64,000 nt of DNA from Antechinus flavipes (lineage: Eukaryota). The stretch's first letter is position 1; the number at the start of each line of letters is the position of its first letter. The notes under the pieces are model-generated. The model did no database searches, was not told where the DNA came from, and saw only the letters and a list, made by a program, of their open reading frames with translations. Positions 8,016 through 50,904 of the stretch are shown here, in pieces. The stretch is taken from assembly GCF_016432865.1 (NCBI RefSeq), contig NC_067399.1:583854001-583918000 (forward strand). Reading direction: 5' to 3'. The position numbers and the translations under genes are program-made.

Positions 8016-10181
8016 TTTAGTGAAAAAAATACTGTTTTAGCCAATTAGCAACTTCCCTGACACTACAGTTTAGGACAATTGATTAGGAAATAGTAGACTA
8101 AGTAATTGTGTTGGGAGAGATTATAGATCTACTTTCTTGACAGAAAGTGAAAGAAACCTGTTCCCTCCCTGTTAGAAACATTCAGTCTTACAAGATATGC
8201 TGTGATGTAAGGCTGGTCTATATTCTTGTTGTAGGCCTAGGGCTGCTTCTGATTCTTGCTGTGGGACTATGGGGTCCAGTCTTTTCCCTCTCTGGGCTCT
8301 CTTTCTTTATCTATAAAAGGAAGGTGTTAGTTCAAGGGTCTCTCCAGCTCTGCCATCTGTTGTGGAAATTTAGTTATTTCTCTGATCCAAAGACAGATCA
8401 TTTCTAGATGAATGGCACAGTCAGTGTTAAATCTTGGAGACAGAGGCAAAGGGCAAAAAAATAAATAAATAATGTCCTAGTTTAGCAGGGCAGATGAGAT
8501 TTTTTAGCATGATGGTTGAGAGGTGCAATCAGAATTCTCCCTCTCCCCGACCCTTCATCTCTTTAAATGCATAAATTTTATAGATGCTCAGAAACACTTG
8601 ATAGAGAAATGCTATGATCTCTCACTTCTTTCCTAGTGCCTTCCAAAGCGGATGTCAGAAATCAGTAACACTTTTGCATAAATATTGAAGTTTCCATTTA
8701 ATGGCACCATAAATCCACTTACTTCAAGGTCATTGTGAAGAACCTCTTTTCAGCAAGCCTCCAACATATCTTTGGCCTGAGGAAGAGCAGCCTAGGGTGG
8801 TGGAGAGTGAAACCTCTTCCAGAGACAAGTTTGACAGAGACATATGGGCAGTTGCCAAGGAGGGGAGTGCTTCTGGCCTGCTCTGAATCCAGTGAGGGCT
8901 CTCAGGCAGAACTAGTCCGACCATGTAGAGTGCTTCTTGTAATGTGCCTTTTCACAATATTGTCTGCCTCATCAGGACTTTTGTCTTTTGGGTGCAGGTT
9001 CACAAGAGAACCTCAGGACTGCCTAAGGATGAGAGAAAGAAATAGGGAGGGCTGTATTTGAAAGCAGAAAATCCTCAATTTGAATTCCACTTGAGAAACA
9101 TCTTAGTTGTGACTCTGGGCAAGTCACAGTAACCCAAGTTTCCTCTTCTTAAATGGGGATAATAATGACACTTTCACAGGATGGCTGTTAGGCTCAACTG
9201 GCATAAAATATGTAAAGTGTTATGTAAACCTTAAACTACTCTGCACATGTTAGCTATTACTATTTTTATTGTCATTACAATTTTGATCAAGAGGTCACAG
9301 TTTTATCCATTCTGTCCCAGGTACCACAGTGGGAGATCTCTCATATCCAATGAGCCATCAAATCTGTGTCATTTAGTAAATGCCCTGGGATGGAGGTATT
9401 TACAAAAGCAAAGGATTAAGCAGCAAGTATTTACTGATCCAAAACTTAGTATTAGAACATGCAGTACAATTGAGAAGAGAAGAGGTACACAACCACAGAT
9501 AAGAAAACAATAAGGAATGTAAGAAAGTGTGAGTAATTCTGTATTAAGTTTGGTGATACATTTTATAAATGGTGTAGAAGTTTAGAGAAGGAGGATCAGT
9601 AAAGGCTGGAAAACCAGTGAAGGCTTTATAGAAGGAATAGAACTTTAGGTGATAGATAGGATTTGGTAGAGAAAAGGTATGAAGGAATGAGCATAGAGTA
9701 TCTGTGGGCCAGCAAAAGAACTAATTGGCTCAAAGGGAAAAAATGTAAGGAAATAAAATTATATGTGTTAGTGTGGAGAGAAATAATAGGAGTTCTTAAA
9801 AGAAAGCTTAAATAGACCTGTCCTTTGCCTTCTAGGAGTTTTTACAAAAAGAATATTGGAAAGGGAGTAGTAGGAGTAGGAGTTGGGGATTCCCGCTCGC
9901 CTCCTCCCCCGCCACACACACTCCAAACTCTTTCTGTCATTATCAGTATCTGGTTTGACTGGAGGCTTGGAGAAAATTGCCTTCTCTTCAACATTTATGG
10001 CTTTACCTTAGGATTTCTGAATTGGACAAAGAAAAACCTGCAAAGCTGATATTTTCATATGTTTGTACAACTTCTTGAATTGGTGAAAATCAAGCTTAGT
10101 CAGTCAATAAATACTTATCATGCACCTATTGTTTACCAGGTGCTGTGGATACAAAGAAAGGCAAAAAGTAGTGGCTCCTTT

Positions 10182-13429: not shown

Positions 13430-15804
13430 ATATATAGAACTTACAGACTTGTCAGGATATATGGAGCCATCAGGCTGGATGGAACCTATACAGATTTTCA
13501 TTCTTTATTTTTCTTTATTATTAGTATAAGACACTCCCCCCCACCCATCCCTAAACAAAGCCTCCTCCTCAAGTTTTAGTCCCTGGAAAGAGTTAACTAC
13601 AGTGTAATGTTGTCATTGAGAATGGTAGTACATCATTTTCCACTTTTATTGTTTAACATTTGCTATGAAAAAGAAAACAAATATATGTATATTTATATTT
13701 ATATATGATAAAATTAACAAGCTGATTAATGGATAGACAGTCAGATAGACAAAAGAATAAAGGAAAATATCAGAACCATAGCAGATAGCCCTTGTCTTAG
13801 AATGGGGAAGAGTCATGATCTCTCTTGAGAAAATAATCACAAGTACTTGTTTACCATTAATCATGATCAGAACCCTGGGATCCCCTTCCCCCACTCCCAT
13901 GAGAACTTAGTTTGTACCTTTGTGAGCCACTTATCACATTTTATTTTGTATTGCAGTTATATGTGTACATGTCTTATCTTTCCTACTTGAGGGGTGATGT
14001 CTCATTCATCTTTCTAATCCTCATAGCTCCTGGCATAGGGCCTTGGCTGTTTACTAAATGAATGAGGGAGTGGATGAATGAATGAGTAGTTGAATGAGTG
14101 GAAGAGTGAATGAATCTTGACAGGAGAGTAAGAGGGCAGACTGGATAAGGATGGGAAGGTACTCTCTTGGGAGAGGAATATTTCCCCATAGACATTCTGG
14201 AAAGTTGTTTCACTGACAAAGAGATAATGAAGTAAGTACCTAGGTTCATATGGCATAGCCTCTGGCTATTCAGTAAACCATTCTGGGTTTTGCTTGTGAA
14301 TAATGTCTATACCAGCCAGAGATTGAACAAATAGTAGGGCTGGTTCAAGAAATACAATCTCCCCTTCTCTCTCCTGTACTTTCTTATGATCTTTCAATTT
14401 TCTTCACCTGGCTTATTAAGACTCCTATAAAAGTGTGAGAAACTATAACCATTGGAAAACTTTGTGGTTCTCAGGCAAGAACTCCAGGCTTTTGAGTATT
14501 TATATACCCATTAGTTGGGATGGGGAAAGGAGCAGGTGTTTATTCAGTAGTCCTCACTACCTTGACATCTCTTCTGCATCTTGATATGGCAAAGATTTCC
14601 TCTCATGTATTTCAGACAGCTGAAAACTTGATTTGGTGCTTAAAAGTGAGAAAGAAGAAGGAGGGGCCTGTCACTGACAGGACCAGTTTGAATGACTGTG
14701 TGTATACACACATGCATATGGTATGTGACTAAAATTGACACATTTTAAAACAAAGACTAGGGCTTAGGCGTTGCGTTTCTTGGGAGACTGTGCAATGTTC
14801 CGAGGATGGGAATTCTTTAGAAATGGCCTTTCCAGCTGAACGTGCATAGAGGAAAATCTATCTCATTGCCCAATGGGCATGTTATGTTCTGGGTAAAAAC
14901 CTCAGCCAAACCACATATATATATCTTATTCCTGATTCTTAGCACTGAAAGAATTTTAGCTATTCTGGTGATAAGGACTTTTTTTTAACCTCCAGTGATA
15001 TTCAAAAGAATGTGTCACTAACCTTTACTTGGTGTCTTTATGCATTTGTGTGTTATATATTTCCAGTGGCATTTATGTACCTGCATATGTGTGTATTTAT
15101 CTATCTATATATGTATGTACATTTGTTTTTATACATACATAAATATCTGAAATATGAATATAGAATGTTTAGACATGAGAGGTACCCTAAAATTTTTCTT
15201 TTACATTCGACAAAACTGAAGTTCCTTCTGAGAATTAAATTAGTGGTCTAAGTTCGTTCAGGTATATTTGAGGTCTTGTGGATCCTATCAGAAACATGAA
15301 ACTGTATTTGAGAATGTGTGTTCATGTTTCAGGTAGAACTTATAACAGATTGTTTCAAGGGTCCTGTTTAACTCTAACTCTAGCATATGATTAAATGTAA
15401 AAATGTATGTATATACATATGTATATGTATATATATGTATGTGTATGTAGCTCCATGAAAACATGGATAAGTTATGTACCTGAGTGTATTCCCTACTGCA
15501 CCTATAGGGTCTTCTGCTAATAAAACTTTAGTAAACTTCAAATAATATTTATCATCTATCTATCTATGCATACACATATGTATATGTGTGTATGTATAAT
15601 AATATTAACAAAAACATTTCTATCACATTTACTATGTGTCAAGTACTGTACTAAGCACTTAGCAATTATTAATTTGATCTTCACAACCATCCTAGGAGTT
15701 AGATATATATGGATATGTATATGTGTATATATATATAGAGAGAGAGAGACATCCACATCCACATCCACATTCCATTATGAAACATTTGCTTCCTCCTCCT
15801 GCAG

Positions 15805-24317: not shown

Positions 24318-25669
24318 TATACATGTATATGTGTCTGTATATGTGTATGTATTGGTATGTGTTTGTATATATGCATACTATTATTTCACTTTCAATGATA
24401 TCTCCATCATTCTACCTTTTAAGAGCATCATTTAATCTTTTTTTTTTCTCTTTATTCATTTTCTCCTTGCTTCTATTCTATATAGGGAAACCTTTACAAA
24501 ATAGACTTGTTAGAACTATAGGTAAAATAAATATGAATAATCTCTGAATGAGGGCTATAGGGAATATCTGATGAAGGAATATAACTTTATTATATAGATA
24601 ATTTGACACTTATTTTTATTATTCATCAACCTTTTAAGCTTTCTTCTTGGCTTTAAGCTGGATCCCACAGAAAAAATAACTCTAGAGAACAAAATTTCAG
24701 AAAATTAGCTGTTAACTGATTTTTGATTAGTTTGCTTCTAATCTGCTTTTTTTTTTGAGCTTTTTTGGCTCTAAAGCCAAATTCTAAAGCCAGGATCCAA
24801 GGGTACCTTTTCTCATCAGAACTGAAGTCAGAGAGACCTGAGGCCATAAATTAACTTAGACATTGAAAAATTAGCTAAAATTTCATGATGTTTAATTTAA
24901 ACTTTAATGACATGGATATTTTGAAAAGATGTATGTCCCAATGATTTCCCTCTATTCCCCACATATGCCTTCACTAAACTCATGTATGTACACTTAGGCA
25001 ACTGCCCCAAACACTTTTTAAAGTACTAAATTTCCAACCATAATGACTAAATATAACATAAAATAATGTAAATTATTATTTCTGTGAAAGTAGAAGAAAA
25101 ACTTCAAAGGAAGAATTTTTAATGTTTAAACAGCTATAAATCACAAAATTAAAAACTTAGTTCTTATAGCCAAATTTATTTCAGGAGAAAATTCTGTTGC
25201 AACAAATGTCAGGAAACTTGAAAATTCTTCTTCAGGTCCTGGACTAATATCCTTTCTACTACAGCCAGCAAGATATATGACAGAGTATTTAAGATAGTCT
25301 CAAAGAAAACTTGGGTTAACATTTTGTCTTACTAGCTTACTAGCTATGTAAACGTGAGCAAGTCACCTAGTCTCTCCATCTGTAAAGTGGTAGCAGTAAT
25401 AATAATGATATTTTTTCTCTATCTACCTTATAAGATCATTTTGAGAATCAAATGAAAAAATGTATCAAAATAATTATAATTACAACATTACATAAAATTT
25501 CAGGCATTATTATTTTAAATTGAGTCTTGTGTCATATAAGGGACTAACTGAATTCAGAAAGCATTTTTTGTTTCATAAAAATTTGTATTATGTGTGTATG
25601 TATTTTTTATTGGTTGGCCTTGTCCTACTCTTCTTGACTCCATTTCAGGTTTTCTTGGTAATGATTCTT

Positions 25670-26283: not shown

Positions 26284-26449
26284 TCTTGGCAATGATTCTT
26301 GAGTGGTTGCCAATATTTTATAGATGAGGAAATTAAGGCAAGCAAGGTTAAATGATTTTCTCAAGAGCTGCATAACTAGTAAGTGTCTGGGGCTGGGTTT
26401 GAACTCAGGTCTTCCTGATTTCATGCCTGATGCTCTATCCATTGCACCA

Positions 26450-26632
26450 TTTCTATATACATGTGTTTATAGACATACATATGCATACATACATATAATG
26501 TATATATACATATATTTATACATCATTATAGTACATATGCAATATATCAATGATATCAATTATACTGTACATGCATATATATACATGCATGCACGCATAT
26601 ACACTACATGTACATACTTTATACTTTATATG

Positions 26633-26678
<46 letters not shown>

Positions 26679-26830
26679 TCACAATATATAGACAATACTG
26701 CAGGAGCATATACATGCATATATGCATGCACAATATACTGTATATATAAATATTTTATACTTTGTATGCAATATATATACACAATATACAGACAAAACTG
26801 TAGGTGCAGGTACATGCATGCATGCACAAT
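26450..26830. repeat. Low-complexity TA/CA tract with (AT)20 and an internal tandem duplication
   Basis: (AT)20 at 26635-26674. The unit TTATACTTT.TATGCAATATAT..CACAATATA.AGACAA.ACTG.AGG.GCA..TACATGCAT..GCATGCACAAT occurs twice (about 26618-26731 and 26755-26829). Confidence 0.85.
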
Positions 26831-28958
26831 TATAAAAGCCCTTCCATCATCACACTTCCTTTGGGTGGGTACTTACTTGTGGTCAGAAGATTCTTAGTGG
26901 CAGTAGCCCGTCAGAAGTGAAGCTGGTTTATGCTGCAGGTTATGTGTGAGAAGGAGGAAATGTTCCTTGAAAATTTTATCGTGCTCATAATTCCCTCAAA
27001 ATCAATCATGGCTGCTTTTAACAGCCAGTTATTAGAGCGATAACTGCTCTTGGTCTCACCTTGGGCCATTAGCTAACAAAAGTAGTTGTTAGCTGCCCAT
27101 AATAACCAATTTCTCGTGGATTATTGGATTTTATCAGAGGGAGCTCTCTTTGATGGTGAGAATTTTCAGGAGCTTGTCATTTTCATTTTTATCTGAATTC
27201 TTCTTTGCCCCCCCCCCTTTTTTGCATACTTCATAGCCTTCTCTAGCTTTGAGCTGAACTTGCATCCTTCTTTTTGCTGAAAGCATCCTTGTGTCATTCC
27301 TATCATGTAAGATTTTTTACTTACATGAATCTTACCATCCACCCACAAGAATGAGTTGTATGGATCAGTATGGGTCAGTCCCACTGATGACCAATGGCTT
27401 CTACCCATGATGTGAATTTAGAAAAGTCCCTGTTAGTCGTTTTGTTCTAATCAACCCAGAGCAGCCAGCTAGCTTCTTAGGGCAAGAGTGGACAAATCTA
27501 ATGAAGGGTGAGCAGAGATGATAAAACTAATGGAAATTCCCAGGGCCTCAGACTATACTTCTTAGGTTCTTTTCACATAAAAAAAGTTCTCCATTCCAAT
27601 CAACAATTATGATAATGTCACTATGAGAAAGAAGCACAAGTTGTTGCTACATCCCTATTTAAAGTTGGGAAAACAGTATGTCCAAGTATTGCAGGTAAAT
27701 CTAGGCCAGATTTAGGGCTAGAAGCTAAATCTTGTGAATTCTAATTCACTTCTTTCTTTGAAACATATTGCTTGAGATATGACTATAAATACAAACAATG
27801 AAGATTGTTTTGGATACCCCAATACATATTGCCTAATCTAAGAGATGAGAATATGGTCCTTATTTTAGAGATAAAAAATAATGTCTCTCTGCAACAGAAC
27901 AGCTGCCACATGTTAACTTACTCTGAGATATGTGCATTAGAATGGTATCATCATGGGAACTCTCCATCACCCCCTCCTCAACCCATTTCAGTCAAATCAA
28001 ACTCTGCAACTGCAAAGCCTTGGAGAGTCTATCTAATATATCCTGAACAGAAGCATTAAGCATTTTAATTTAATTCAGCATAAAAATAAAACAAGATTGG
28101 GGAACATTCACCCAACTAAATGTAAAGCTGAAACATTTGCATTTTCCCACCTGCATCTTCCTGTCCTCGTTTTATTTCCCACATGCTCTAAATTAAAATT
28201 CTCCATTGGTATGCATTAGATGTGTTTCTGGCATTCTGATTATTTGTTACCTTAAAACGTGTTGCTGCTCACACCTGTTTTATGAATGCAGTAAGGGATA
28301 GTCAGTTACTTCGCTGATATGTGGCTTAATTCAAACTTGGGAATTCTGCTTGTATTTCTATTGTTAGTTGAGAGCTCCCTTTGTCTCCTAACAAAGTCTT
28401 ATCCACCAATCGGGATCCTGCAGGAGGACAGTGGACAAGAGGCCTTTGGAGGAATGATAATGACTTGGAGGAGGATGATAATGAGAAATCCCTCCCTCCC
28501 ATATGATGAATTGACCCAAATCACAGTGTCCACTGGAGACAAAAGGGATGCCTTTTTCTCCCTTTGCTTATTGGTTTGTGTGTCTAGCAAGCTCACTTTA
28601 TCCTTTAATTGATTATTTAACCAGTATTTTTGGATAAGCTAGAATGCAGAGGGAATCACCCAAGAAGGTTTTATTTAGAGTTCAGGAGCCCTCAGAGATT
28701 ATTTCAAGCCAAGTTAATATATAAATAAATACACAAATAAAATTGTCGATTATTTCCTATTGAATCAGTTCTCTTCATCCAAATGTTCTCTTGTTGATGA
28801 AACAGCATTTGAAATGATGACTATGATTGATGTGTGCGTGTGTTTGTGTTCTTAAACTTGAGGTAGGGGAGCAAGGAAGGAATTGATGGTATTGGATAGC
28901 CCATTCTAGGAATTTTTTATCCTAAGAATTTAAATTGTTCTTCCCCTCATTCTTCTAG

Positions 28959-29092: not shown

Positions 29093-31845
29093 GTTTGAAC
29101 ATGTTTTTAAAATTTCTGGCATTAAATGTTGAGTTGTGGAGTTTAGAATCTTTTCATTACTAATAGAGGGATGGAAACAACAGTGATGTGACTAAGAAAA
29201 TTGAATGTTTTCTTCCATCTTCATGAGAGAAGAACACACTTTTAGTGTGATGATACTTTGGCTCTTGTGATAATTATTTTAAATTTTGGATCCTAATAAA
29301 ACCCATACATGCAAAAAAAAGAAATGTGCACTTAAAAATAAAGATAGTGGAATATACAATGAGAGATGGGATGATGTAATTAAAAGAACCCAGGATTAGG
29401 AGACTTAAGGCTGATCTGACTGTCTTCCTAGCCTCTTGTCACAGAATTGAAGAGTAAAAATAGTAGTAGATTCAAAAGATGTGAATTTAAATCTCAATTC
29501 TGCCACTAGTTTTCTGGGTGACACTTGAAAAGTCTGTTCTCTTTTCTGGATCTCAATTTCTTCATTTGTAAAATGAAATGATTGAATCCAATGATCATTA
29601 TGGTCTCTGATGATCAATGTTCCAGTGAGGTTAACAATGAGATGAACTTGGTAAGTATCCCAACCTCTTTGGATCCCACTTCCACATCTGTAAATTCAGG
29701 AAGGTTGATTACATGATATATTTACTACTTTCCAGATGTGAAGGTTAGCAATTCTTGATGTTGACAAGATATAATTTAACCATTGAAGTGATGTTTTTCT
29801 GATCTTCCCAAGTTAGCCACCAGAACTGCGCTTTCCACTTTTTCTAGAAATCTGGAATAGTGGGTAGAATAATAAGGAGTGTTCATATCTCCTGTCCTGT
29901 CTTTCCTTTCCTCTCCTTTCTTCCCTTTCCTCACCTCTCCTGCCTTCCCTTTTCTTCCCCTCCCCACTTCTCTCTTCTCCTCTTCCCTCCCTTTCTTTTT
30001 CTTTTTTCTCCTCCTCTTTACTTTTCTGAATTTTATTTTATAACCAATGAGGAACTATTGAAAGCTTTTAAGTGGGAGAGTGACACACTTGCATGGCTTG
30101 ATCATTTAGGAACATCTGTTTACACCGAGGTCTTATTTTTAAAACCTGGGTAATATGCAATAGCCAAATAATTTTATACTTTAAAATCAACACAGATTTA
30201 GTATGTTGTATGTTATTCTGGGGCAATTTGGTATAGTTAACTACAAAAATTTCATTTGCAGCTCACTGTTCCCATTAGTCAAGTAGAAATCTCATAAGTA
30301 AATTGTCACTCAGTGATTTGTCAGTTGGCTGCCTGAGCTTGCTAGATGACTTGTTACCTCTCTTGCCCAAAGGAATTCTCAATGGGAATAGATGGGGCTT
30401 ACACATGGTTGGACTGCAAACCAGGCATTATTTTAAAAAATATATCATTGCAACTCCACCCTCCTGTCTGTCTAGAAGCCAGATTCAAAAAAGTCAATTG
30501 CTTGTCCATTGGATTTGGAGTCTTCTAAAAGGCCAATTTGCTGGAATTAAAAGAGGTTCAGCTTAATAAATGTGTCTGCTTGTCTAATAGATTTGAGCAA
30601 ATGAACCTTAAAACACTTGATTTAATTTAACATGCGGCTCCAGACATCAGTGACTGGTTGAAAACTCAAGGAGCCAGTTAAGAGTTCCAGCTTCCTGATG
30701 GCAGTGAAACCAGCCGTGATGCTATAACAACTGATGAAAAACAATAGCAGTTTAGAAAAACAAGTGCCTCCATTTCCTCAGCCTGGCTCTGGCTCAAAGA
30801 CCATTGTAAGCACCCTGCCCAATCTTCCTTGAGGTGGCCTGCTGCTGAGCCCATGCTAGCTGACCCACTGAAAGAGTTCTATCTGATCTCCTACACCCCA
30901 TCTTTAGGTACCTGAATTTCTCAGGATAGTGGAAGATCTTGGGGAACTGGGCAGAACTTGCACATTCCCAGAGGAAATGAATTCTGAATTTTAACCTGAC
31001 CTCAGCACTGATAAAGCTTGTAAAGTGGCAAGAGCAGTATTTGATAATAAATCTAAGAGTAGAAAAGCTTAGTGGTAAAGTAGAAAGAATGCCCGAGAGA
31101 CAGTTAAAAGATTGGGTTTTAAATTTGGCTCTTTTCCTTGTAACCTGTGTGACCTTGAGCAAGTCAATCCCAGAATTCTATAAATAGAAGGAACTCTATA
31201 TAAATGTTATTGACTGACTGCTTAAAAATTCCATTGAGCATCTACTAGCTCCTGAGTCAACCTATTCCACTTTTGTTACCTCAAATTTTAGGAATATTTT
31301 TCAGAGGCAACACAGGGAAGTGATTATAGAGTGTGGGACTTCCACTATAGAAACCCTAAGTTCAAACTTTGCCTTTGACACTCAATAGCAATGGGATCAT
31401 GGGAGAGTATCTTGACCATAGTTCATCATCTGAAAAATGATGACATTAGACTAGATAATCTCTAAGGGATTTTCTAACTCTCTCTGACTATGATCCTTTT
31501 AATTCAATCTGAAATTTGTTCCTTTGCAACTACCACCCACTTTTACCCTTTGGCACAAAACAGAACAAGCTTATTCCATCTTGCACAAGAAAACCCTTTA
31601 AATATTTGAAGCACATAATCTTGTCTCCTCTTCCCCTGCCTCCAACCACCTTTTAAAGATTTTCTTCTCTAGTCTAAAATTAAGACTTTTCACCATCCTA
31701 GTCGCCCCTCCTCTGTGAATTCTCCAGCTATCAAGGTTGTTTCTAAATCTGTACTCTCACAACAGGAAACTGAAATCTAAGAGTGATCTCATCAAGGCAG
31801 GACTTTTACCTCCGTTCACATACACATGTGTATATACAAACACAC

Positions 31846-31990: not shown

Positions 31991-32888
31991 AAAAGAGAGA
32001 TTTAGATAAATACATATCAATCTAAAATGATAGTAACTTTTTTGACTGTCACATTAGACTATCACACAGTCTGCAAACTACTAATATCTCCAGGATCTTT
32101 TTTTCGCCTCAGGCAAAGTGCTTTCTAGTCATGCCTTCCTCCCCCATCTTGTGCTTATAAATTGATACCAGGTATAAGATAGTACATTTATCTTTTTAAA
32201 ATTTAATCTTCTAAGATTCTGTTTAAAACCTTCATATATAAACAACTTTTCTACTCTACTGCCAACCTGTACATTATCTGTCCCTCCCTGCTTTATATCA
32301 ACTATAAATTGGATAAACAGACCAACTGTACCTTTAACTCAAAGGTTTGAAAAAAAATATTAAGTATCATAGGACCAAGAATAAATTCTTTTCAAGTCTG
32401 TGCTGGAGACCTGCCATATTGATGTTATATCAATCCCATTTTGAGTCTGGGTGTTCAACAAGTTCTAAAATACCTGTCTAAGTTTAAATCTTAAGTCATA
32501 CTTACCAGCTCTGTAACTCTGGGCAAGTCATTTATTATCACTCTATTTGTTTCAGTTTTCCTAATTAAATGAAGATAATAGTAGCACCTATCTCAGGTCA
32601 TGGTTGTGAAAATAAACTAGATTCACAAACATTCAGGTACTATTTCAATGCTTTTATTATATTATTATTGCTCCTACATTAAACTTCCTCAATCACAGCT
32701 GCTAGTAAGTTGTACCAATTATATTTATTTCATCTCACTAATTAGGAATTAAGACTCCATGGGGGTGTGAGAGAGGCAGGTGAATAAGATGCTGATTAAA
32801 GTATTCTTGAGATGATCAGAGGAAGAATCCAGTGACTTTCAGGAATTGGACACGAGTGGTAATTTTTTTTTTCTTTGATGTCTTTCAG

Positions 32889-37514: not shown

Positions 37515-40360
37515 AAACGTTCCATGTCTAATGTCATGGAAGGGTCCACAGACTGGTTGGCAGCTCAGGGAAGTCTTGGTAACTCAGGCAAGTGCATCTT
37601 TCAGATCACAACCACCCTGTCTCTCCTAAGTATTTGGCATCTCTGCAGACCCTTAAGAAGAGATATTTTCCATTGCAATGACAACAGTTGGCAGGGGTGG
37701 GCAGATGTGATACAAAGTACAGTCTAACTGCCAGGGATAGTTCTGGCACACAGGCTGGCAGGGGAAAAGCTTTCTATCTGGGATGAGGAAAATGCTCCCT
37801 CCAGATGTGGGCACCAGAGAATAAAACCTCATTTTGCTAGTTCTGGTTATGGCTCTGTGACTTTGTGCCCTGCTATTTTCTATCCTTGCAAGCCCTGTCC
37901 AAAAAGAGAAAGCATTTGAATTTTTCTATGTATGCTGGGAAAGTTTGTTTCTTATCTCCTAGCTGAAATCCTGAACAATTTAAGCTCTTCTTCTTCTGGA
38001 GAGAAAATGAATTGTTTTTAGACTTGACTCCCTGGGGAGAAACAGATTGCCTTATCTTGCCTTGGCTAAGAAAACTGCTTTTCTCCGAGATTGTCCAAAG
38101 GGATTGTGATTTACCGGTGTCTTCAAGTGGGTAGAGGAGCACTGATGGGTGTGAGGCACTAGAAACAACACCCTGAGCCCATCATCTCCCTTCCTTTGTC
38201 CTCCTGAGCATCAATCCTTTGACAACTGCAGGTCAGAACAGTCATGGCAGTGAAAGCAGGCAGAGGGTGAGTTAAAGGGGCTAAAGGCCACATTTCTGGG
38301 GCTGAAACAAAAGGAAAATGTTCCTTATCTTCCTATAGCCTGTGGTGAGGATGTCATCCATGTCATGGGTGGCTTTCTGGCTCCAGAATCCTGATCCAAA
38401 GGACAGCTGGACTGTCTCTTGTACTATTTCTACTTTACTCAACACCTCCAAACTTCCTTAGTAGAGATATGTTGCTTTGAAATCTGAAAGATGTGAATTC
38501 AAAGCCTGCCTCTCAGTCTCAATTTCCCCATCTACAAAATAAGGAGAGTGATTTTGATGACCCCTAAGGTCTCCAGTTCTAAACCTATGAACCTATGATG
38601 TCTAGTGAAGCTAATTGTTGAAACTTCACTCATAGGGTCAATAAATTGTTTGGTCTCAGGCTATTACCCAAAGCTTTGATTTACACAGTTGTGAACCCAT
38701 TGTTGACCCATTGTCAACAAGGTTATAGAAACCAGGTGACAGAGGGCCAGCATTTTTGAAGGCTAAAAGGCACTAGCTCATCAAGTCAAAGACCTGAGTT
38801 CAAGTCCTAATCTTAATTCATTGTATAGTCTGGGCAGAGTTTTGATCTATAAAGTATGGGGATACTTTTTGACCCTGAAGATATATTTATAGCTTTGATG
38901 ATTGAATTTTTTAACTCAACTTAACCATTAACTTTACCTCTCTGAATTTCAGTTTCTTCGCCTGTAATATAGAAATTACAATGGCACCCACCTCAAACAG
39001 TTGTTGAAATGAAATAATACATGAAAAATATGAAATGAAATGAATTAACATATGTAATAATGTATTTAAAATTTGAAATAATATCTGAATGAAAACTATA
39101 TAAATTAAATAATATATGTAAAATTTTTGGTAAGCCCTAAAACAATACATAAATCAGGAGATCTTAAGCTGGGATCCATGGCTTGTTTTATAGAAATATC
39201 TTGATAACAATCAATTATTAATATAATAGTATGATATTAATTTTTCTCATAACTATATTTCAATATAATTGGCTTCCTTTGTAATTCCATTTATTTTATG
39301 CTTTTAAAAAGCATTGTTCTGAGAGGGGGGGTCTGTGGGTTTCAGCAGACTGCTAAAAAAATCTGTGGCATAAAAATGATTATGAACCTTTGATAACTAA
39401 CTATGTTGGTTATCATCATTTTCATTGTTATAAGAAGAAGAATGGATTTGGACTCCCCTCTACATTTCCTTCTAGCAGCTTGGGTCCTGCAATGGCCATA
39501 GTTTTCCGCAGCCTTCCTTCCTTAAGTAGAAGGATTGTGCATTGGAGTTGGCCAGAAATAAAACAGTCTTCTCAATGAGTACATCACTTTTACCAGACCT
39601 CTTTATTCTGAAATAGCAAGTGACATGTGTGAACTATATTTGGAAGCTACAATATCCATCCATTTAGATAAATAGGTAATTATGGTGATGAATAGCAGCT
39701 GTGATATTAAGGCGAGTAAAGCAAGATAAGAGTTGGGAACAACAGCCTGAGTCTGTTGAAGTTTTATGCTGGAATTATGGAGTGATTAAATCAACTTTCC
39801 ACATGCTTAGGCCTGCTGGAGAAAATGAAGTAGGAAAAATGACTCCTAAATTTTTGGTGGCAGGTCTTTGCTTTTTTTCTTCTCTGCTGCCCATTGTTCA
39901 TCAGCTGTTCATCAGTCAATGACTTGAGTATGGGAATGGGATAGGGACAAGAGGATAAAGAGGAGGTGCTTTTCCCCAGAACTCTTGAGAAAGTTTCCTC
40001 TCCTGTATTGGACCCACTTAGTACATTGAGGGAACTGATTGATGGTTGGATAAGCATTGGATACTAGATAAAGCAGTGGATAGAGGAGATTGTCAGACAT
40101 TTGAAGTTAAGAAGATCTGAATTCAATCCTGACTTAGACACTCTGTGTGAATATAATCTCTCTCAGCCTTAGTTTCCCCATCTATAAAATAAGGGGAGTG
40201 GCTTTGACCTCCTTCATCTCTAAGCCCATGATCTTATGACCACTAGTGAAGCTAATTGTTGAAACTTCACAGATAAGGTCTCTAAATTATTTGGTCTCAG
40301 GTTATTCTCCAAAGTTTTGATCAGACAGGTTGTATCCCATTGTAGACCCAAGCTTCAAAT

Positions 40361-40859: not shown

Positions 40860-41846
40860 GTGAGTGCCCACAGAGGAGAGGAGGTGGTTTTAGGGGCTGT
40901 AATTTTTGATCTTTAGAATGAAAAGGAAATGAAAGCCTTTCTTCTTAGTTTCTATAAAAAATATGCTTTTTACAAGTTCTTTTGTTTTTAGTGACCCAAT
41001 AGAAATCCTTAACCATATGGGAAAATAACATGATAGGGAGAAAATACTGTATCATAAGTTAAATAAACAGATTGCTGTGTATCTTTGGATTAAAAAAAAA
41101 ATACTGCTTTCTAGGCTTCCATTTCCTTGTAAGGAAATTGACACCATTTGGTGAGTTGATATTTAAAGTGTCTTCCCATTCAATATATTCTATAAAAGTT
41201 GGTTAAGAAGGTGGGGTGAAGCTCAATCATTGTAAAAAGGAATGGAGAATGTAGATGCCCAAGTCCCTCCTGTGCTATCTGTCTGTCCCCAGCCCAGAAT
41301 GGTCAGGTCTTGAAGTTTATCCTTAAATCTTTCCAGTGAATGGAGTGTTTCTCTATATCCCAAATGTGGAAGCTTTTCAGAGCATCAGGCCAGTTGGGCT
41401 TCTGAGGATTCAGTAGAGAAACAGAATGAAATAATTCATTATTATTTCACCTTGAATGCCTTAAGTAACTGCACACAATAGTTGTCCCAAAGTACTTTGA
41501 GCAGACAGAGAACATTCCAGCCTTCCTCCTGCTTTCCTCAGCTGGGTATAGATTACCTAAAGAATAGTAAGTTTACTCAAGCAGAGTCTGTCGTGATCTT
41601 TTATCTGAGAAACAGTGGTCCATGGCTTTCTCCCTGATGGAGGCCATGAGCTCAAAACAAAATGCAGCTTGTGTGTATGAATTGCCTTTGCAAAACAGCA
41701 GGTGAGGCAATGAGAAACAACAGATAAGCAAAGCAACTGGCTTGCCTCTTTTCTCAGGACAGAGCTAATATTTCTCCCAATTTCCCTTCCCCTCCCCAGA
41801 GAAGAACATATATAGAGAACTTCCTAGTATTTTTTATTCCTTTCAG

Positions 41847-41952
41847 CTCCACTTGTGGACTCCAGCACAGGGCACAGCAGCTCAGCAATGTTGATGCTTT
41901 TGTCTGTAGTCTTTGTGGGCTTGGCTGTCTTCTTGATCTATAAGTTTAAAAG
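41847..41952 (+). CDS. SORCS3: SORCS3 transmembrane exon: (A)PLVDSSTGHSSSAMLMLLSVVFVGLAVFLIYKFK(R)
   Basis: cctttcag acceptor, AG|gtaagt donor, 106 nt, phase 1/2; hydrophobic helix followed by the basic stop-transfer KFKR. Confidence 0.97.
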
Positions 41953-43871
41953 GTAAGTGCTAACCACTTTCAGTTTTACCTTGGGAATTGGACAAGGAGA
42001 GCGAGTTGTTGTCTTCCTTGTACCTAGACTCTACCTCCCCTCCCAGACTACCCAAAGGGCATTAGAGTAGATGACATTCACAGCTGGAGTTTCCCTATAT
42101 CTGTTTTTCTGTGTTCTTCAATTAACTTGTGTTTTTCTAACTTTATTTATAAATTCCTTGAGGTTAGGATTTGCTATCTTATTTATTCTTGCACACAATA
42201 GGTATTTAATAGATAATTATTTATTGAAAGAAGGAATGAAGGACTAAATGAGTAGAAAAATGAATAAGTGGATAGATAAGTAGAAAATGGATGAATGAGT
42301 GGATAGATGGATGGATAAATGGTGGCTGGATGTATGATGATTATGTGGGCAGAGTAGTTTCTTTGTTCCAAATAAAGTCATAAAGAAGCAAAAGGAAATA
42401 AGCTAACAAGTATCATTTCTTTTTATTTCTCTTTGATCTTCAAGTTTACCTCTGCAACCACATATCTTACTCCTCAGGATGGCCCCTAGTTCCTACCGTT
42501 CTGATACTTGAATGATCACAGAAATAGCTTTTTATGCTGTAAATGATTTTTTAAAAGAACAAAAAAATCTCCCCTCACAAATTTAACTGGCAATAATTTA
42601 GTTAACATTCATATACTAAAATTACTCACCTTCCATCTCTCAGTTTTTCCTAATCAATTTCCTTTTAAAAACTTAGAGGAAAAATAACACAACTCTGCAT
42701 GTGTTCAGGAAAAAAAAAATCCGAAAGCAATGGGAGTTGAATCATAAAAGAATAATTCAGGACATGAAATTGTAATCAATAGTTCTATTCCATTAGTTCT
42801 CAATTGTAGTTCCTCTATTAGCAAAAAGGATATATTCCACTGATGAGCCTCTTTGGCAGAAACTTTATAACCAGAGGCAGAAATAAAATAGACAGCATAT
42901 GGATGACATCTAAGGTATAGGGATAGAGGTGGAGACGGGGAAGGAGGCTACAGAATGAAAAATCATTAAATAATAATGTCACCAGGCAATTTAAAATGTT
43001 CTTGAGAGACTGTAAGGGGACAGAGCAAGTTCCATCTAGGTTGAATGCAGGAAACTAGGGGATACAGGAACAAAGGGATTCCAACCTTCACCTGGAATCC
43101 CCCCTTGACTTCCCTCTGTAGTCTCAAGTCCTATAATACTTTCATCTTATCTATTTCTCCTTCCCACGGATCTGGCTACCTATGGGCTGAAGCCTAAAAT
43201 ACTTTTAACTAAGGACCAAATTTTTCTTTCCATAGTGAATGTAAAAAAGCTTCAAATGCCCAGCTGATTTTCAACTTATTAGACAAATCACTTGAACATA
43301 TAATGAAAAATTATCACTTTCTTTGATTTGATTGGAGAAAAGGGAAAGAACTGGGAAAAGGAAGAATGAGTGGTTTACTGATACAGGAAGTAGAGCTTAG
43401 GGGAAAAAAATAAGAATATTGAAGACTGTTTAGTTCTAGGATAGTGAAGTAGTGCTTGGAAGTACCTTGCTTATGTCAAACACAATTATTGAATCCTGTG
43501 ATTTATAGAGATCCCTTTTTGCTTTTTTCCTCCCCTTCCTTTCTTTCTTGGTTTTACTTCGAACCCCATTGACTTCCTTAAAATGAGCACCATTCATTGA
43601 GATAGCACTGTACAATAAATTCTCCTGCTCCCCATACCACATCAGGAGCAATTCTGTCCCTTTGGAGGGTCCAGACAATCCACAGTTCACTATGGAGCTA
43701 CATGAGAACTACAGTGTCAATCAATAAACCCCGACTTTTAAAAAAGTAACCGGCATCCCGTACACTCTTTCTTGAATATCAAAAAATTTTGGAGTTGCTC
43801 CCCAGGCTCCTAGCCAGAGCTTCAGGCCTCCTTCCCACTGATGCACGGCTTCTTTATTTCCTCTCTGCCAG

Positions 43872-43925
43872 GTCAGCTGCATCTGTAAATCTTTCAGTTC
43901 CATTAGGCACAAAGAATCGCAGGCT
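43872..43925 (+). other. Candidate alternative SORCS3 exon (54 nt, phase 2/2): (R)SAASVNLSVPLGTKNRR(L)
   Basis: Branch-like CACTGAT, pyrimidine tract GGCTTCTTTATTTCCTCTCTGCCAG acceptor, CT|GTGAGT donor, open in the SORCS3 frame. There is no transcript evidence. Confidence 0.4.
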
Positions 43926-45434
43926 GTGAGTGCCTGGCTCCTGGACACAGACTTTGCTTCTGTTTCTTCTGGGGAAATTGAACTTTCTAGATCATTGGCT
44001 TGGCTCTGCTTTCAAACTCCAACCTTTCTCTTCACAGCTCCCCAGTCATTGCCCCCAAGGGCTGACCAGCAGGAGGAGAAGGTCTGAGTCACATTGCCAG
44101 CCCTAACTACACTTTAAGTAACCGTGAGACTGCCATCCCCTATTTGGTGTGTGGATGTGAATAACATCCAATAATGCCGCTGTAATAAAAATACAATTTA
44201 AATACATAATATAAAATAAATATATAATAAAAATTATATAAAACATAGTTATATGCAATTAAATATAATTACAATATAAAACAAAGTAATATAAAATATT
44301 AATATAAAACAAAGGCACAAGCATTTCTCAAACTGTTCTCATCATACTAAGATATCCAATTTCTTGAGGAAATGTTTGAAGTTGTTAAAGTACTTTGTGG
44401 CTTTGCCGGCATGGCCTTGCCATTGTAATTGTACCTATTTTATTATTTAATGCTGTCTCTGAAGGTCTCTAGGCACATTGTGTGTGAGACACAAACAAAG
44501 ATAATGTTTGTTAGCTGAAAAAGCTGGAAAGAGCATCAGACCCTGGCTCAGGAGGCCCAAGTGCCATTCAATAGTTGGTGGGCCTAAGGCAAGTCTTCTA
44601 ATCTTTCTGTAAAATGAACTAATTTTTTTCTTACAATGTCCCAAGACCATTGAAGGAATTGAAAATAAAATGCTGAAGCACTCCATCTAAGCTATGTTAT
44701 TATGCAGATATGAAAGTAGAATTTTTTTGCCTTCAATGTATCATTGGATAACCTGGGAAATGACCAGAGAAAAATCTGTTTAAATCTTTCCCATTGTTGC
44801 ATTGATTCACATGATCAGATATGGTAGAGAGTATTTGGTTCATTTAAACATTTTTATTCAGTTGTTTCTTGAGATAATTTCAGTAAAAGTTTAGTGTAAA
44901 ACTGTGGATTTGGCTTTGAGGGAAGGCAAAGTTGTTATTTCAATCACATTTGACTCTTGTTGTCCCTATTTGGGGTTTTCTTGGCAAGGATCCTGGAGTG
45001 GTTTGCCATTTTCTCCTCCAGTTCATTTTACAGGTGAGAAAACTGAGACAAACAGTATTAAGTGGCTTGCTTGGCGGCACATAACTAGCAAGTATCTGAG
45101 TTAAAATCTGAACTCATAAAGTTGAGTTTTTCATTGCACCATACAGGACTTAGTTTCCATCTTAACTTATGTTTTTCTGCACAACGGAACTCTACTTATT
45201 TTGGGGGAATTTACTTTTGCTTTGGAAGTCAAAGGACTGGGGAGGGTCTAGAATGGGCTCTAACACTAACAAAAAATGAGATATTGGGCAAGACACTTCC
45301 CTTCTCTGGGCCACAATTTGCTTTTCTGTAAAATACAGGAGGTCCTGGGGGGGTAGGACCTAAGATAGGTCTCTGCTCTCCCTTTTTGCTGTGATCCAGT
45401 TGTGTTTGATTCCTTCATAAAAAGTCAGTGTGAT

Positions 45435-48400
45435 GAAAATGGCTGAGTAAATGCTGGAATTTGACCAACTTCTCCATCAAACTGCTCCAAATTTCTTTAA
45501 ATAATATCTCCAAACTAATTTTAGGGCATCACAACACCCAAAAAATGGAGTAGAACGTTTTTCAGCCAAAGGCAATTTAGCAGCTTAGCAGAAAAGGCCT
45601 GTGGAACCCAGGGTAGGAGCTTAGCCCACAATCCCAGGGCAGACCCAGGCCCAGCTCCAGCCAGACCCCAGAATTAGCTGGTTGGAACCTCTGCATCAGT
45701 AGCAGTGCTGGAGGCTTCTGGATCTCAGTCCCAGGATACGAGGGAAGACTCTGAAGGTTAGCAGAGAGAGTCTGTGGCAACAGGGTGGGAATGTGGTGTG
45801 CAGTCCCAGCATAGCCCCAGTCCTGGCCAGCACACTAGATCTTACAGTCACAGTGAGGCTGGGACACACTTAACAGCTACAGGGCAGAAAAGAATGATTG
45901 TGATCAGATTTCTGGAAGGATTTCTGGAAACAGCTGCACAAAAACCCTGAAACTTGGGATAATGCATCCTCCACCCTGGAAATAGAGCACTACTTTAACA
46001 AAGAATTAAAAGCAGAGGAATAGGCTAGGAAAATAGCAGAAAACAAAAAAAATGTTTCTGACCATTGAAAATTATTATGATGACAAAGATCAAAACACGC
46101 ACTAAGAAGATAACAAAGTCAAAGCTTCTACAGCCAAAGCCTCAAAGGAAAATAAGAACTGAGCTCAGGTAATGGAAGGGCTCAAAAGGGACTTTGAAAA
46201 TCAAGTAAAAGAAATAGAGGAAAAATTAGGGAAAGAATTGAGAGGTGCAAAAGGAAATATAAAAAACTAATAAGGAGAAGAATGCCCTAAAGAACAAAAT
46301 TAGCCAATTGGGAAAGGAAGTACAAAAGCTCACTAAGGAAAATAATTTCTAGAAAAATAAATAGAATTGAGTGAATGGAAACTAATGATTTTATGAGAAA
46401 TCAAGATACAATAAAGCAAAACCAAAAAATGTGAATTATCTCATTGAAAAAAAATTGACCTAGAAAATACATCCAAGAGAGATAATTTTAAAATTATTGG
46501 TCTACGTGAATGGCATGATCAAAAAAAGAGCCTGGACATTGTCTTTCAAGAAATTATCAAGGAAAATTGTCCTGGTATTCTAGAACCAGAGGGTAAAATA
46601 GAAATGGAAAGAATCCACTAATCGTCTCTTGTAAGAGATCCCCAAATAAAAACTCCCAGGAATATTGTAGCCAAATTCCAGAACTCCCCGGTCAAGGAGA
46701 ACATATTGCAAACATCTAGAAACAATTCAAGTATAGTGGAGCCACAGTCATAATAACACAGATTTAGCAGCTTCTACATTAAAGGACCAGAGGGCTTGGA
46801 ATATGATATTCTTGAGAGCAAAGAAACTAGGCTTTCACCAAGAATCACCTACCCAGAAAACTTCTTCAGAGGAAAAAGGTGGTCATTCAATGAAACAGAG
46901 GATTTTCATGCATTCATGATGAAATGAAAATAGAGCTGAATGGAAAATTTGATTTTCAAATATAGGATTCTGGAGAAGCATAAGGAAATAATCTGGAAAG
47001 TGATTTCATAAGGGAATTAATGAGGTTTATATGTTTATATTCCTACATGGGAGGATGATACTTATAACTCATTAGAATATTCTCATTATTATAACAGAAA
47101 GAATATATATATATACATATATATGTAGAGAGAGAAGGGGGGAGGTATGAGTGTGAGTTGAATGTGAAAGAATAATTTTTTAAATTATGAAATTAAGGGG
47201 TGAGGGATCAATGTACTGAGAGAAAGTGAAAGGGAGAAGTGGAATAGTGCAAATTATCTGCCATAAAAAAGAGGCAAGGAAAAAAAAAAAACATTTACAG
47301 TTGAGGGCAAGAGGGGGAATAAAGAGGTGATGAGCGAACCTTACTTTCATCAGAATTGGCTCAAATAGGAAATAAAATACATACTCAATAGAGGTCTTAC
47401 CCTGCAGGAAAATAGGAAGGGAATGGGATTTGAGAAGGGGAAAGGGAGATAAAAGAGAGGGCATATTAGAGGAAGAAAAGGCTCAATAGCAAAACACCTT
47501 TGAGGAGTGACAGGGTAAAAAGAGAGAGAGAAAAAATGGGAAGGGGAAGAAATATAATTAGCAATAGTAATTATTAAAAAAATTCAAATTAAGTTTCTCT
47601 GCTAAGACCTCATTTCTCAAATATAAAGGGATCTGGATCAAATTAATAAAAAAAAATAAGTCATGCCCCAATTGATAATGATCAAAAGATATCTGTGCCC
47701 AAAGGGCTGAAAATTCATTCATGTCCTTTGACCTAATAATACCCCTACTAGACATGAATACCAAAAGTGATTTGGTTTAAAAAAAAACAGTAAAAAAGGA
47801 GAAATGACCTATATGTACAAAAATATTTATAGCAGCTCTTTTCTCAGGACAAAAAAAAATTAGAAATTGAGGGTATGTCCATCAATTGGAGAATGGCTCA
47901 ATAAACTATGGTATATGTTTGTGATGGAATACTATTGTTCTCTGGGAAATGATGAGCAGAATTCTTTCAGGTTTTAAAAAAAAAAAACTGGAAAATTCTC
48001 CATGAACAAAGTGAAATATGCTGTATACAAAGTAATAGCAATGTTCTGGGATGACCAAATGTAAATGACTTTGCTATTCTCAGTAATATAAAACACTCAT
48101 GACTACTCTGAAGGATTTTTGATGAAAAATCCTATTCATACCTAGAGAAGGAACTGATTGTGTCTGAATGCAGGTTGACGCATTCTCTGTCTCTCTCTCT
48201 TTCTTTTTAACTTAATTTTTTTGGTGATTTTTATTTTCATTTGGGTGGGAGACCTATATTTTCTTTCACAACTTGACTTTTATGGAAATGTTTTGCATAA
48301 CTTCACATGTGATTTTGTAAGTGTGGATGGAGATAATGGAGAGGAACTAGAGCTCAAAAATCTTAACAGTTGTAAAAAATCTTTTGAATGTAACTGGGGA

Positions 48401-48923: not shown

Positions 48924-49084
48924 GAAAATTCCCTGGATAAACATCTATGCCCAAGTTCAACATGACAAGGAGCAGGAGATGATTGGGTCGGTGAGCCAAA
49001 GTGAAAATGCTCCAAAAATCACCCTCAGTGACTTTACAGAGCCCGAGGAGCTGCTGGACAAAGAACTGGACACACGAGTCATAG
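48924..49084 (+). CDS. SORCS3: SORCS3 cytoplasmic-tail exon: (R)KIPWINIYAQVQHDKEQEMIGSVSQSENAPKITLSDFTEPEELLDKELDTRVI
   Basis: caccacag acceptor, G|gtaaat donor, 161 nt, phase 2/1; contains the YxxPhi motif YAQV. Confidence 0.97.
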
Positions 49085-49352: not shown

Positions 49353-50839
49353 AAAAAAATAGTTAACTTTGAGCTAGTTAGTCCAAAAAAACTCATTCTC
49401 CCTATAAAAAGAACAATTGCTAAGAGAAGAGGTTTATTGTTAGTCATTTTGATCATCTCCCTCTCTCAGTAACCTTACATGAGATTTTCTTGGCAAAGAT
49501 ACTGGAGGGGTTTGCCATTTCCTCTCCAGCTCATTTTACAGATGAGGAAAGTGAGGAAACAGGATGAAGTGACTTGCCTAGGGTTACACATTTAGTAAGT
49601 GTATGAGGCCAGATTTGAAGTTAGGTACCTTTTTGAGTACAGGAATAGCACTATATTTACTACACTATCTACCAGCTTTAAGGAAGGGGTTGGGAATGCA
49701 GTAGTAGTTAAGTAGCCTTGACTGAGCCCTCACACTAATACAAATAACTTATGCTCTTATAATGGATATTACCCCTAATTTTTTTTTATTTGCAAAATGT
49801 TATTTGACGTGGTTGTATTTTACTTTATTTAAAGAAGATGATATATATTGGATACACTGGGCTAATAATTATTTTTGAATGAAAGTTACCCCATCATAAG
49901 CACCTGCCTTTACAAAAAGCAAATTATGCATCATCTTAAAAAATAATCAAGAATGCTCTGGAATAAGTAGTCAGGTTCAAATTATGTCTCTGTTTCTTAC
50001 TGACTTTGGCCAAATCACTTAGGAAAGCTAGGTGACAAAGTAGATAGAGGTGCTGAAGACTCTCATCTTCTAAGTTCAAACAGAGCCTCAGATATTTATT
50101 AACTGTGTGACCCTGGGCAAGTCATTTTACTCATTTGCCTCAGTTTCCACATCTGTAAAATGAGCTGGGAGAAGGAATTGGAAAACAGCTCCAGTATCTT
50201 TGTCAAGAAAACTGCAAATAGGATCATGAAGAATTGGAAATGACCCAAATGACTTGATCAAAACAATAAATCACTAATTCTTCTTCATCTTGTTTCCTCA
50301 ACTGAAAAATTAAAAAGCAAAAATGAAAAGCCCCTTCTAGCCTTTGACTTTTGATCTTATAAGTCTATAATCATATAAATTGAGTTCAGAAAGGTGGAGC
50401 AAGATGGCCCTTGTTTTTTTTTGTGCTAATTCTAAGATAATTGCTTTTTTTAAGTATAAGGAGGATGAATTCCTTTTCTATTAATATGGCAACTAACATC
50501 TTTTATATAATAGTTTCTAAATGCCTTGTGAAAGAGTGAGAACACCTTCTTGGGAAAGTCAAGACCAGATTTCTGAGTCACTCCCGAGGGATCCCAAGTG
50601 ATAGGAACAAAGCTGTCTTGTTTTAGATTCCAAAAAAAAAATATTTGGTGAAATTACTTCATGGACAGATCTTGAGAGGAACTGCTGTGCTAGGCTGAAG
50701 GGCAGCACTGTGTGGGGGAGGCTTTCCCAGTGCCTCCTTGTTCACATTGTTCTAAAGTCTGTAGTTCTAAACCAAACACTATTGATCCTCATTGACCACC
50801 TGTCTGAGACTCTCTATTTCTGTCTCTTATGCCCTACAG

Positions 50840-50904
50840 GTGGGGTTGCCACCATTGCCAACAGTGGAAGCACAAAGGAAATTCCCAACTGCACTAGTGT
50901 TTAA
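50840..50904 (+). CDS. SORCS3: SORCS3 last coding exon: (G)GVATIANSGSTKEIPNCTSV*
   Basis: gccctacag acceptor, phase 1, TAA at 50902-50904. The C-terminal T-S-V is a class I PDZ-binding motif; the terminus matches recalled SORCS3. Confidence 0.97.

What the first reader, a model, noticed from the sequence alone, without database searches (positions are those of the whole stretch)
43830..43931. Candidate frame-preserving 54-nt exon in the SORCS3 intron right after the transmembrane exon
Seen: a repeat-free, CpG-retaining block has a branch-like CACTGAT, a strong pyrimidine tract and AG (43870-43871), then 54 nt and CT|GTGAGT. The host intron is phase 2. Splicing 41952>43872..43925>48924 gives ...YKFKR-SAASVNLSVPLGTKNRRL-KIPWINIYAQV..., an 18-aa juxtamembrane insert with no stop, placed upstream of the YAQV sorting motif. 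If the donor is not used, the frame ends CTG TGA (43924-43929), leaving a short tail ending TKNRRL* with no YxxPhi or PDZ motif. A TGC just before the AG and a TGCACG upstream resemble SRRM4/nSR100 and secondary RBFOX motifs of neuronally regulated exons. Established: the paralogues SORCS1 and SORCS2 produce alternative cytoplasmic tails by splicing downstream of the TM exon, which alters trafficking. I do not recall such variants for SORCS3. Inference: this may be an undescribed SORCS3 tail isoform.
Basis: partly seen in the sequence, partly recalled or inferred. Interest (0 to 1): 0.72.

Follow-up and report, generated by a model that had tools for sequence, protein, structure and literature searches.

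The report
Unproven 54-base exon in SORCS3
A 54-base stretch in an intron of the marsupial brain-receptor gene SORCS3 has good-looking splice signals and keeps the reading frame, but it has no counterpart in birds, a snake or a frog and no known protein contains it, so it is most likely an unused look-alike exon.

Summary
The sequence description holds. AG sits at 43870-71. The 54 nt at 43872-43925 are open in the phase-2 frame. The donor is GCT|GTGAGT, and a branch-like CACTGAT lies 30 nt upstream of the AG. Spliced in, they would add 18 aa between ...YKFKR and KIPWINIYAQV.

By rough splice matrices the acceptor is the best in the 6971-nt intron. A pair this good, frame-preserving and open, arises by chance in about 0.7-6% of simulated introns. 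That is unusual locally but expected many times across a genome-wide scan.

No evidence of use was obtained.

- The orthologous intron of eight birds, a cobra and a frog aligns only at the two flanking exons.
- Of 120 SorCS3 representatives, 113 have the canonical KFKR|KIPW junction, and none carries the peptide. No marsupial was among them.
- A long-read study of human brain reports no exon after the TM exon.
- The CpG and GC excess belongs to a ~0.4-kb block, not to the 54 nt.

Most likely this is an unused pseudo-exon (~0.6). A marsupial-specific minor cassette exon remains possible (~0.2).

The parts
41847..41952 (+). SORCS3 transmembrane exon (…SAMLMLLSVVFVGLAVFLIYKFK+AG), donor AAG|GTAAGT, ends in phase 2
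   Evidence: The peptide is 100% identical to bird SORC3.
43836..43842 (+). Branch-point-like CACTGAT, A at 43841, 30 nt upstream of the AG. No AG lies in between.
   Evidence: The function is inferred from the consensus only.
43848..43871 (+). Pyrimidine tract and AG of the candidate acceptor (TTCTTTATTTCCTCTCTGCCAG). It contains CUCUCU/UCUU and a UGC.
   Evidence: It has the best acceptor score in the intron (13.6 on a rough matrix; real exons of the window score about 5.7-13.7).
43872..43925 (+). Candidate 54-nt frame-preserving exon, adding 18 aa (SAASVNLSVPLGTKNRRL). It holds one CpG, one UAGG, a decoy TTTCAG and a decoy GTAAAT.
   Evidence: No evidence of use was obtained.
43926..43931 (+). 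Candidate donor GTGAGT. The exon side, GCT, does not match the consensus. The in-frame TGA at 43927-43929 applies if the site is not spliced.
   Evidence: Score 6.5 (real donors in the window score 3.0-11.7).
43700..44180 (.). GC- and CpG-richer block that surrounds the candidate. CpGs lie at 43732, 43751, 43759, 43846, 43918, 44123 and 44178.
   Evidence: Its nature is unknown and no repeat, RNA-family or protein-family match was found.
44184..44189 (+). AATAAA 255 nt after the in-frame TGA. It would be needed for the 'short tail' terminal-exon reading.
   Evidence: About one such hexamer per kb is expected by my own estimate from the window's base composition, so it carries no weight on its own.
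48924..49084 (+). SORCS3 cytoplasmic tail exon (KIPWINIYAQV…TRVIG)

Best explanation
The 54 nt at 43872-43925 are an intronic pseudo-exon. They sit in a GC-richer ~0.4-kb block of the intron between the SORCS3 transmembrane exon and the first cytoplasmic-tail exon. By chance the stretch combines a strong acceptor, a passable donor and an open, length-mod-3 reading. It is not included in SORCS3 mRNA, or only at trace level. The normal product joins 41952 directly to 48924 (…YKFKR|KIPWINIYAQV…), as in every other vertebrate examined. Shown here: the sequence features, the lack of deep conservation, and the absence of the peptide from all the proteins fetched. Inferred: non-use in this species.
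For: - Conservation: only the two flanking exons align between this window and the orthologous loci of eight birds, a king cobra and a frog (TM exon 76-83% nt identity, tail exon 78-89%). Nothing in the intron aligns, and the peptide has only chance-level tblastn hits there.
- Proteins: 113 of 120 SorCS3 cluster representatives have the canonical KFKR|KIPW junction. No 6-mer of the insert occurs in any of the 303 fetched proteins.
- Spliced partial SORC3 products from birds, a snake and frogs are also canonical.
- Human-brain full-length amplicon sequencing reports a single novel SORCS3 exon, in the lumenal part. A review that lists the Vps10p-domain receptors with splice variants does not include SorCS3.
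- Background rate: splice-like pairs are common. At acceptor >=10 / donor >=6.5 the non-coding strand of this window has 24 pairs, and at >=12 / >=6.5 it has 7.
- Composition: the exon has no GC excess over its flanks (0.44 against 0.44), whereas all 11 real exons exceed theirs by 0.04-0.17. Only 1 of the block's CpGs lies in the exon.
- Internal motifs: the exon carries a UAGG silencer-type motif and decoy sites, and the donor has no exon-side match.
Against: - The acceptor is the best in the intron, and the pair is within the range of the window's real exons.
- In simulated introns a frame-preserving open pair of this quality appears in only 0.7% of cases (1.8-6% at looser thresholds).
- At the strict threshold the opposite strand of the whole window has none.
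- The surrounding block has a CpG count otherwise reached almost only at real exons in this window.
- Non-use in this species was not tested: there are no reads, no marsupial relatives and no marsupial gene models.
Confidence: 0.6

Rival explanations
1. A lineage-specific (marsupial or narrower) cassette exon, included in part of the SORCS3 mRNAs, perhaps in neurons. It would insert 18 aa right after the membrane-proximal KFKR and push the YAQV (YxxPhi) motif about 18 residues further from the membrane, which could change adaptor binding and endocytosis.
For: Strong acceptor with a branch point at -30 and a clean AG-exclusion zone, a GTGAGT donor, 54 nt, an open frame. Chance probability 0.007-0.06 for this intron. 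The CpG-rich surroundings resemble the flanks of real exons. CU-rich and UGC motifs lie upstream, as in neuron-regulated exons. Lineage-specific frame-preserving small exons do occur in SORCS3: the human 60-nt exon 20a. Sorting motifs depend on their spacing from the membrane.
Against: There is no transcript evidence at all. There is no counterpart in birds, a snake, a frog or in human transcripts. No annotated protein has the insert. The exon shows no exon-type GC differential. It holds a UAGG, and the motifs cited are short and common.
Confidence: 0.22
2. The block 43700-44180 is a non-coding functional element, for example an intronic enhancer or a hypomethylated regulatory site. That would explain the retained CpGs. 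The splice-like motifs inside it would be incidental.
For: Four of the five CpGs in 43700-43999 lie outside the 54 nt, and three are clustered 110-140 nt upstream. The GC rise spans about 400 nt rather than the exon. There is no repeat, RNA-family or protein-family match.
Against: There is no alignment to the bird, snake or frog introns. Nine other non-exon GC peaks exist in the window, so the block may be plain compositional noise or an old unrecognised repeat. Nothing positive was tested.
Confidence: 0.12
3. An alternative terminal exon. The acceptor is used and the donor is not, translation ends at TGA 43927-43929, and the message is polyadenylated after AATAAA 44184. The result is a receptor with the short tail …KFKRSAASVNLSVPLGTKNRRL, lacking the YAQV and PDZ motifs, by analogy with the short SorCS1 tails.
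For: An in-frame TGA lies right at the donor, with AATAAA 255 nt downstream. SorCS1 makes alternative tails from sequence after its TM exon.
Against: AATAAA is expected about once per kb at this base composition (my estimate). There is no transcript evidence. No fetched protein ends with this tail.
Confidence: 0.04

Closest known systems
Intronic pseudo-exons (splice-site-flanked stretches that the spliceosome ignores; described for HPRT and other genes, cited from my own knowledge)
   Same: Good acceptor and donor scores at exon-like spacing inside an intron, with no conservation and no transcript support. Comparable pairs are frequent on both strands of this window.
   Different: This one scores at the very top for the acceptor and also keeps the frame open, which only 0.7-6% of simulated introns achieve.
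SorCS1 alternative cytoplasmic tails (SorCS1a-e)
   Same: The variation would lie immediately after the homologous TM exon ending …IYKFKR and would affect sorting motifs. SorCS1 tails of this kind are visible among the fetched proteins.
   Different: The SorCS1 variants replace the tail, by read-through or by alternative downstream exons, and are documented experimentally. Here an 18-aa insert would be added to an otherwise unchanged tail, and nothing documents it.
Human SORCS3 novel exon 20a (60 nt, frame-preserving; PMC12455821)
   Same: A small, frame-preserving, lineage-restricted extra exon in the same gene.
   Different: It lies in the lumenal PKD2 region, not the cytoplasmic side. It was seen in long reads and is listed in the paper's novel-exon validation table with its PCR primers. 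The present candidate has no read support.
SRRM4/nSR100- and RBFOX-regulated neuronal microexons
   Same: A UGC between the pyrimidine tract and the AG, CU-rich upstream sequence, a GCACG nearby, and a host gene expressed mainly in neurons.
   Different: At 54 nt it is longer than the usual microexon range. It is not conserved across vertebrates, whereas such microexons typically are. There is no UGCAUG.

Membership tests
Cassette (alternative) coding exon | Competent 3' splice site (branch point, pyrimidine tract, AG) | tested here: met
   Score 13.6, at the top of the range of the window's real exons. In silico only, on a rough matrix.
Cassette (alternative) coding exon | Competent 5' splice site | tested here: met
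   GCT|GTGAGT scores 6.5, within the real range of 3.0-11.7, but with no exon-side match.
Cassette (alternative) coding exon | Length a multiple of 3 and no stop in the host frame | tested here: met
Cassette (alternative) coding exon | Junction-spanning transcripts (both junctions) | not testable with these tools
The runs found are listed.
Cassette (alternative) coding exon | Splice sites and frame conserved in related species | tested here: inconclusive
   There is no counterpart in birds, a cobra or a frog. Marsupials, monotremes and eutherians could not be reached.
Cassette (alternative) coding exon | Exon GC above flanking intron GC, as in exons of AT-rich regions | tested here: not met
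   0.44 against 0.44, whereas all 11 real exons exceed their flanks by 0.04-0.17.
SorCS-type alternative cytoplasmic tail | An annotated or sequenced product with a different sequence after …YKFKR | tested here: not met
   113 of 120 SorCS3 representatives are canonical, and none carries the insert or the TKNRRL end. No marsupial model was among those listed.
Neuronal microexon (SRRM4-dependent) | Length of 3-27 nt (up to about 51 nt) | tested here: not met
   The candidate is 54 nt. The size limit is from my own knowledge.
Neuronal microexon (SRRM4-dependent) | UGC motif close to the 3' splice site | tested here: met
   TGC at 43866, 5 nt before the AG. It is a 3-nt motif and carries little information.
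Neuronal microexon (SRRM4-dependent) | Deep conservation across vertebrates | tested here: not met
Exonised SINE (MIR-type) | Similarity to the SINE family | tested here: not met
   A profile built from the window's own copies finds 29 copies elsewhere and none in 43300-44190, even at E<=10.

The most novel reading that the evidence does not exclude
A marsupial-specific, neuron-regulated SORCS3 isoform with an 18-aa juxtamembrane insert. It would move the YAQV endocytosis motif away from the membrane and so retune receptor trafficking. It would be the first alternative cytoplasmic-tail form described for SorCS3.
Probability: 0.12. Interest if true: 0.5.

Novelty: not a real feature. Interest (0 to 1): 0.2.

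Why it matters
SorCS3 is a neuronal sorting receptor linked to synaptic plasticity and to psychiatric and Alzheimer's risk. Its paralogue SorCS1 changes trafficking through alternative tails. A SorCS3 tail isoform would therefore be of real interest to the field.

The present evidence does not show one. It shows a good-looking splice-site pair of a kind a genome-wide scan turns up by chance. The practical value of this report is to narrow the question. Any such exon is not ancient and is not seen in human brain transcripts, so only marsupial RNA or marsupial genome alignments can settle it.

Tried and rejected
1. Reads. The look-up of sequencing runs listed 12 runs. Only local composition and matrix counts ran over the whole window.

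2. Relatives through called ORFs. The word search with the minus-strand ORF that covers the candidate came back blank.

3. Annotated isoforms. I used a representative search to get a bait and then a region search. The fish bait ranked fish and birds first, only 120 of 224 hits were listed, and none was a marsupial. With hindsight, a mammal-like bait would have been better.

4. Eutherian intron. The bat model P0300 spans more than 100 kb, so no DNA was given.

5. Possible human contigs. Genomic ORF hits held on many metagenome contigs (for example P0031, P0026 and P0023) might be human or other primate. I did not fetch or compare their contigs.

6. Metagenome scan with a 26-nt acceptor-plus-exon pattern: blank.

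7. Repeat origin rejected as far as testable. No self-similarity, no MIR-like match, no tRNA, no Rfam or Pfam match, and no flanking duplications.

8. snoRNA. A snoRNA upstream of the acceptor was considered. The only hit is a weak one, snR40 on the opposite strand at E = 0.63, so the idea was rejected.

9. Joined model. Exons were searched one by one by reference, and the reading across the junctions was checked only for frame.

Full report
**What is there**

The window is AT-rich (36.6% GC) and very CpG-poor (observed/expected 0.088). It carries the last eleven coding exons of SORCS3 on the + strand, from about 15805 to the stop after …KEIPNCTSV near 50902. Notes from other agents on this genome call it a marsupial; I did not test that myself.

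- The transmembrane exon is 41847-41952. It ends AAG|GTAAGT after two bases of a codon.
- The next exon starts at 48924 (ACAG|G) and reads KIPWINIYAQV….

- CACTGAT at 43836-43842, 30 nt before the AG, with no AG in between.
- A long pyrimidine tract ending TGCCAG|G, with AG at 43870-71.
- 54 nt at 43872-43925.
- GCT|GTGAGT as the donor.
- The phase-2 reading R-SAASVNLSVPLGTKNRR-L-K without a stop.
- An in-frame TGA at 43927-43929 if the donor is not used.

**Is it more than chance?**

- The candidate acceptor scores 13.6. It is the best in the intron and at the top of the range of the window's real exons (about 5.7-13.7).
- The donor scores 6.5, in the lower middle of the real range (3.0-11.7).
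- At these thresholds the + strand of the whole window has three acceptor-donor pairs. One is a real exon, one is a false acceptor paired with the TM exon's donor, and one is the candidate. The opposite strand has none.
- At slightly looser thresholds the opposite strand has 7 pairs, and looser still 24.
- In 1500 order-2 Markov copies of the intron, a frame-preserving, open pair of this quality appeared in 0.7% of copies. At looser thresholds the figures were 1.8% and 6%.

The candidate is therefore unusual for this one intron. But the thresholds were set after the fact, and a scan of a whole genome's introns would turn up many such cases by chance. Splice scores alone do not separate real exons from pseudo-exons here.

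**Composition**

43700-43999 holds 5 CpGs, which is the top 1.3% of 300-nt windows. The other windows at that level sit on real exons.

Two points weaken it as evidence for an exon:
- Only one CpG (43918) lies in the 54 nt. Three are clustered 110-140 nt upstream.
- The exon's GC (0.44) equals that of its flanks. All eleven real exons exceed their flanks by 0.04-0.17. The block is also one of ten non-exon GC peaks in the window.

The enrichment belongs to a ~0.4-kb block of unknown nature, not to the exon. That block matches no other part of the window. It does not match a MIR-like SINE profile that finds 29 copies elsewhere, and it has no tRNA, Rfam or Pfam match.

**Transcript evidence**

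None could be obtained. Twelve runs hold part of the stretch.

**Conservation**

A word search with the stop-free stretch around the tail exon returned two kinds of hit: genomic ORFs, and spliced partial SORC3 products from birds, a cobra and frogs. All the spliced ones have the canonical …YKFKR|KIPW… junction.

Their loci gave the orthologous TM exon, intron and tail exon for eight birds, the king cobra and a frog.
- The TM peptide is 100% identical to the birds' and the tail exon peptide 92% identical.
- At DNA level only the two exons align. The TM exon is 76-83% identical and the tail exon 78-89%.
- Nothing in the intron aligns, and the 17-aa peptide gives only chance-level hits there.

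An ancient conserved cassette exon is therefore excluded. Marsupial, monotreme and eutherian introns could not be reached. I did not fetch contigs of hits that might be human.

**Known products**

A representative search followed by a region search gave 120 SorCS3 cluster representatives: fish, birds, a snake, a coelacanth and a bat.
- 113 have the canonical junction.
- Six lack the TM exon.
- One fish model carries a 41-aa intron-like insert.
- No 6-mer of the candidate peptide occurs in any of the 303 proteins fetched.
- No marsupial model was among the 120 listed, so this says nothing about marsupial annotation.

In the literature, a review names SorLA, SorCS1 and SorCS2 as the family members with more splice variants and does not list SorCS3. 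SorCS1 tails are well documented. A full-length amplicon long-read study of human brain reports one novel SORCS3 exon, 60 nt and frame-preserving, in the lumenal PKD2 region. It reports none after the TM exon.

**Reading**

- **Pseudo-exon (about 0.6).** Most likely these 54 nt are a pseudo-exon that is not used, or is used only at trace level.
- **Lineage-specific cassette exon (about 0.2).** It would add 18 residues after KFKR and move the YAQV motif further from the membrane. The mechanism is inferred only.
- **Non-coding element (about 0.1).** The block may be a regulatory element whose splice-like motifs are incidental.
- **Short-tail terminal exon (about 0.04).** It would end at the TGA and use AATAAA at 44184. 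That hexamer is expected about once per kb at this base composition.

Exons were searched one by one by reference, and the junction reading was checked only for frame.

**Verdict**

The interpretation cannot be decided with the evidence available and leans negative. Interest is low until junction reads or marsupial alignments exist.

Noticed in passing
L010 (Hymenochirus boettgeri) 8057-8122, 13685-13768, 25061-25133, 32637-32795, 37615-37695: Besides the true TM exon (3070-3171) and tail exon (30048-30206), the frog locus holds several extra diverged copies of both exons, on both strands. These may be local duplications of the SORCS3 3' exons or an assembly artefact.
   Followed up: no
window, about 29 places, e.g. 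49428-49673 (-), 50026-50281 (+), 44898-45167 (-): A MIR-like SINE family with the core …TTTCCTCATCTGTAAAATG… is abundant in the window. Two copies lie between the tail exon and the last exon.
   Followed up: partly
P0302, P0303 (Pavo, Gallus UniProt models); also P0083, P0192, P0193, P0235: Six SorCS3 gene models lack the transmembrane exon and run intron-like sequence into …RKIPW. These are either TM-less products or annotation artefacts.
   Followed up: no
P0299 (Monopterus albus), P0070, P0079 (fish): One fish model has a 41-aa insert exactly at the KFKR/KIPW junction. Two fish ORFs read straight through a very short intron at this junction. This position is thus prone to read-through models in fish.
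   Followed up: no
window 45511-45930: This is the highest GC peak of the window (0.59 in 150 nt) and lies in the same intron, with very few CpGs. Stop-free stretches there have no Pfam match, and its nature is unknown.
   Followed up: partly
window 46448-46924: Stop-free stretches here (…IIGLREWHDQKKSLDIVFQEIIKENCPGILEPEGK…) look, from memory, like LINE-1 ORF1-type sequence, but Pfam gave no match.
   Followed up: partly
window 7480-7990 and 26320-26900: Long TG/CA-rich simple-sequence tracts give spurious open frames of 70-140 codons.
   Followed up: no
window 41800-41846: A strong decoy acceptor (score 14.4) lies 47 nt upstream of the true TM-exon acceptor, but using it would give no open frame. 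It shows that a top-scoring acceptor in this window need not be used.
   Followed up: partly
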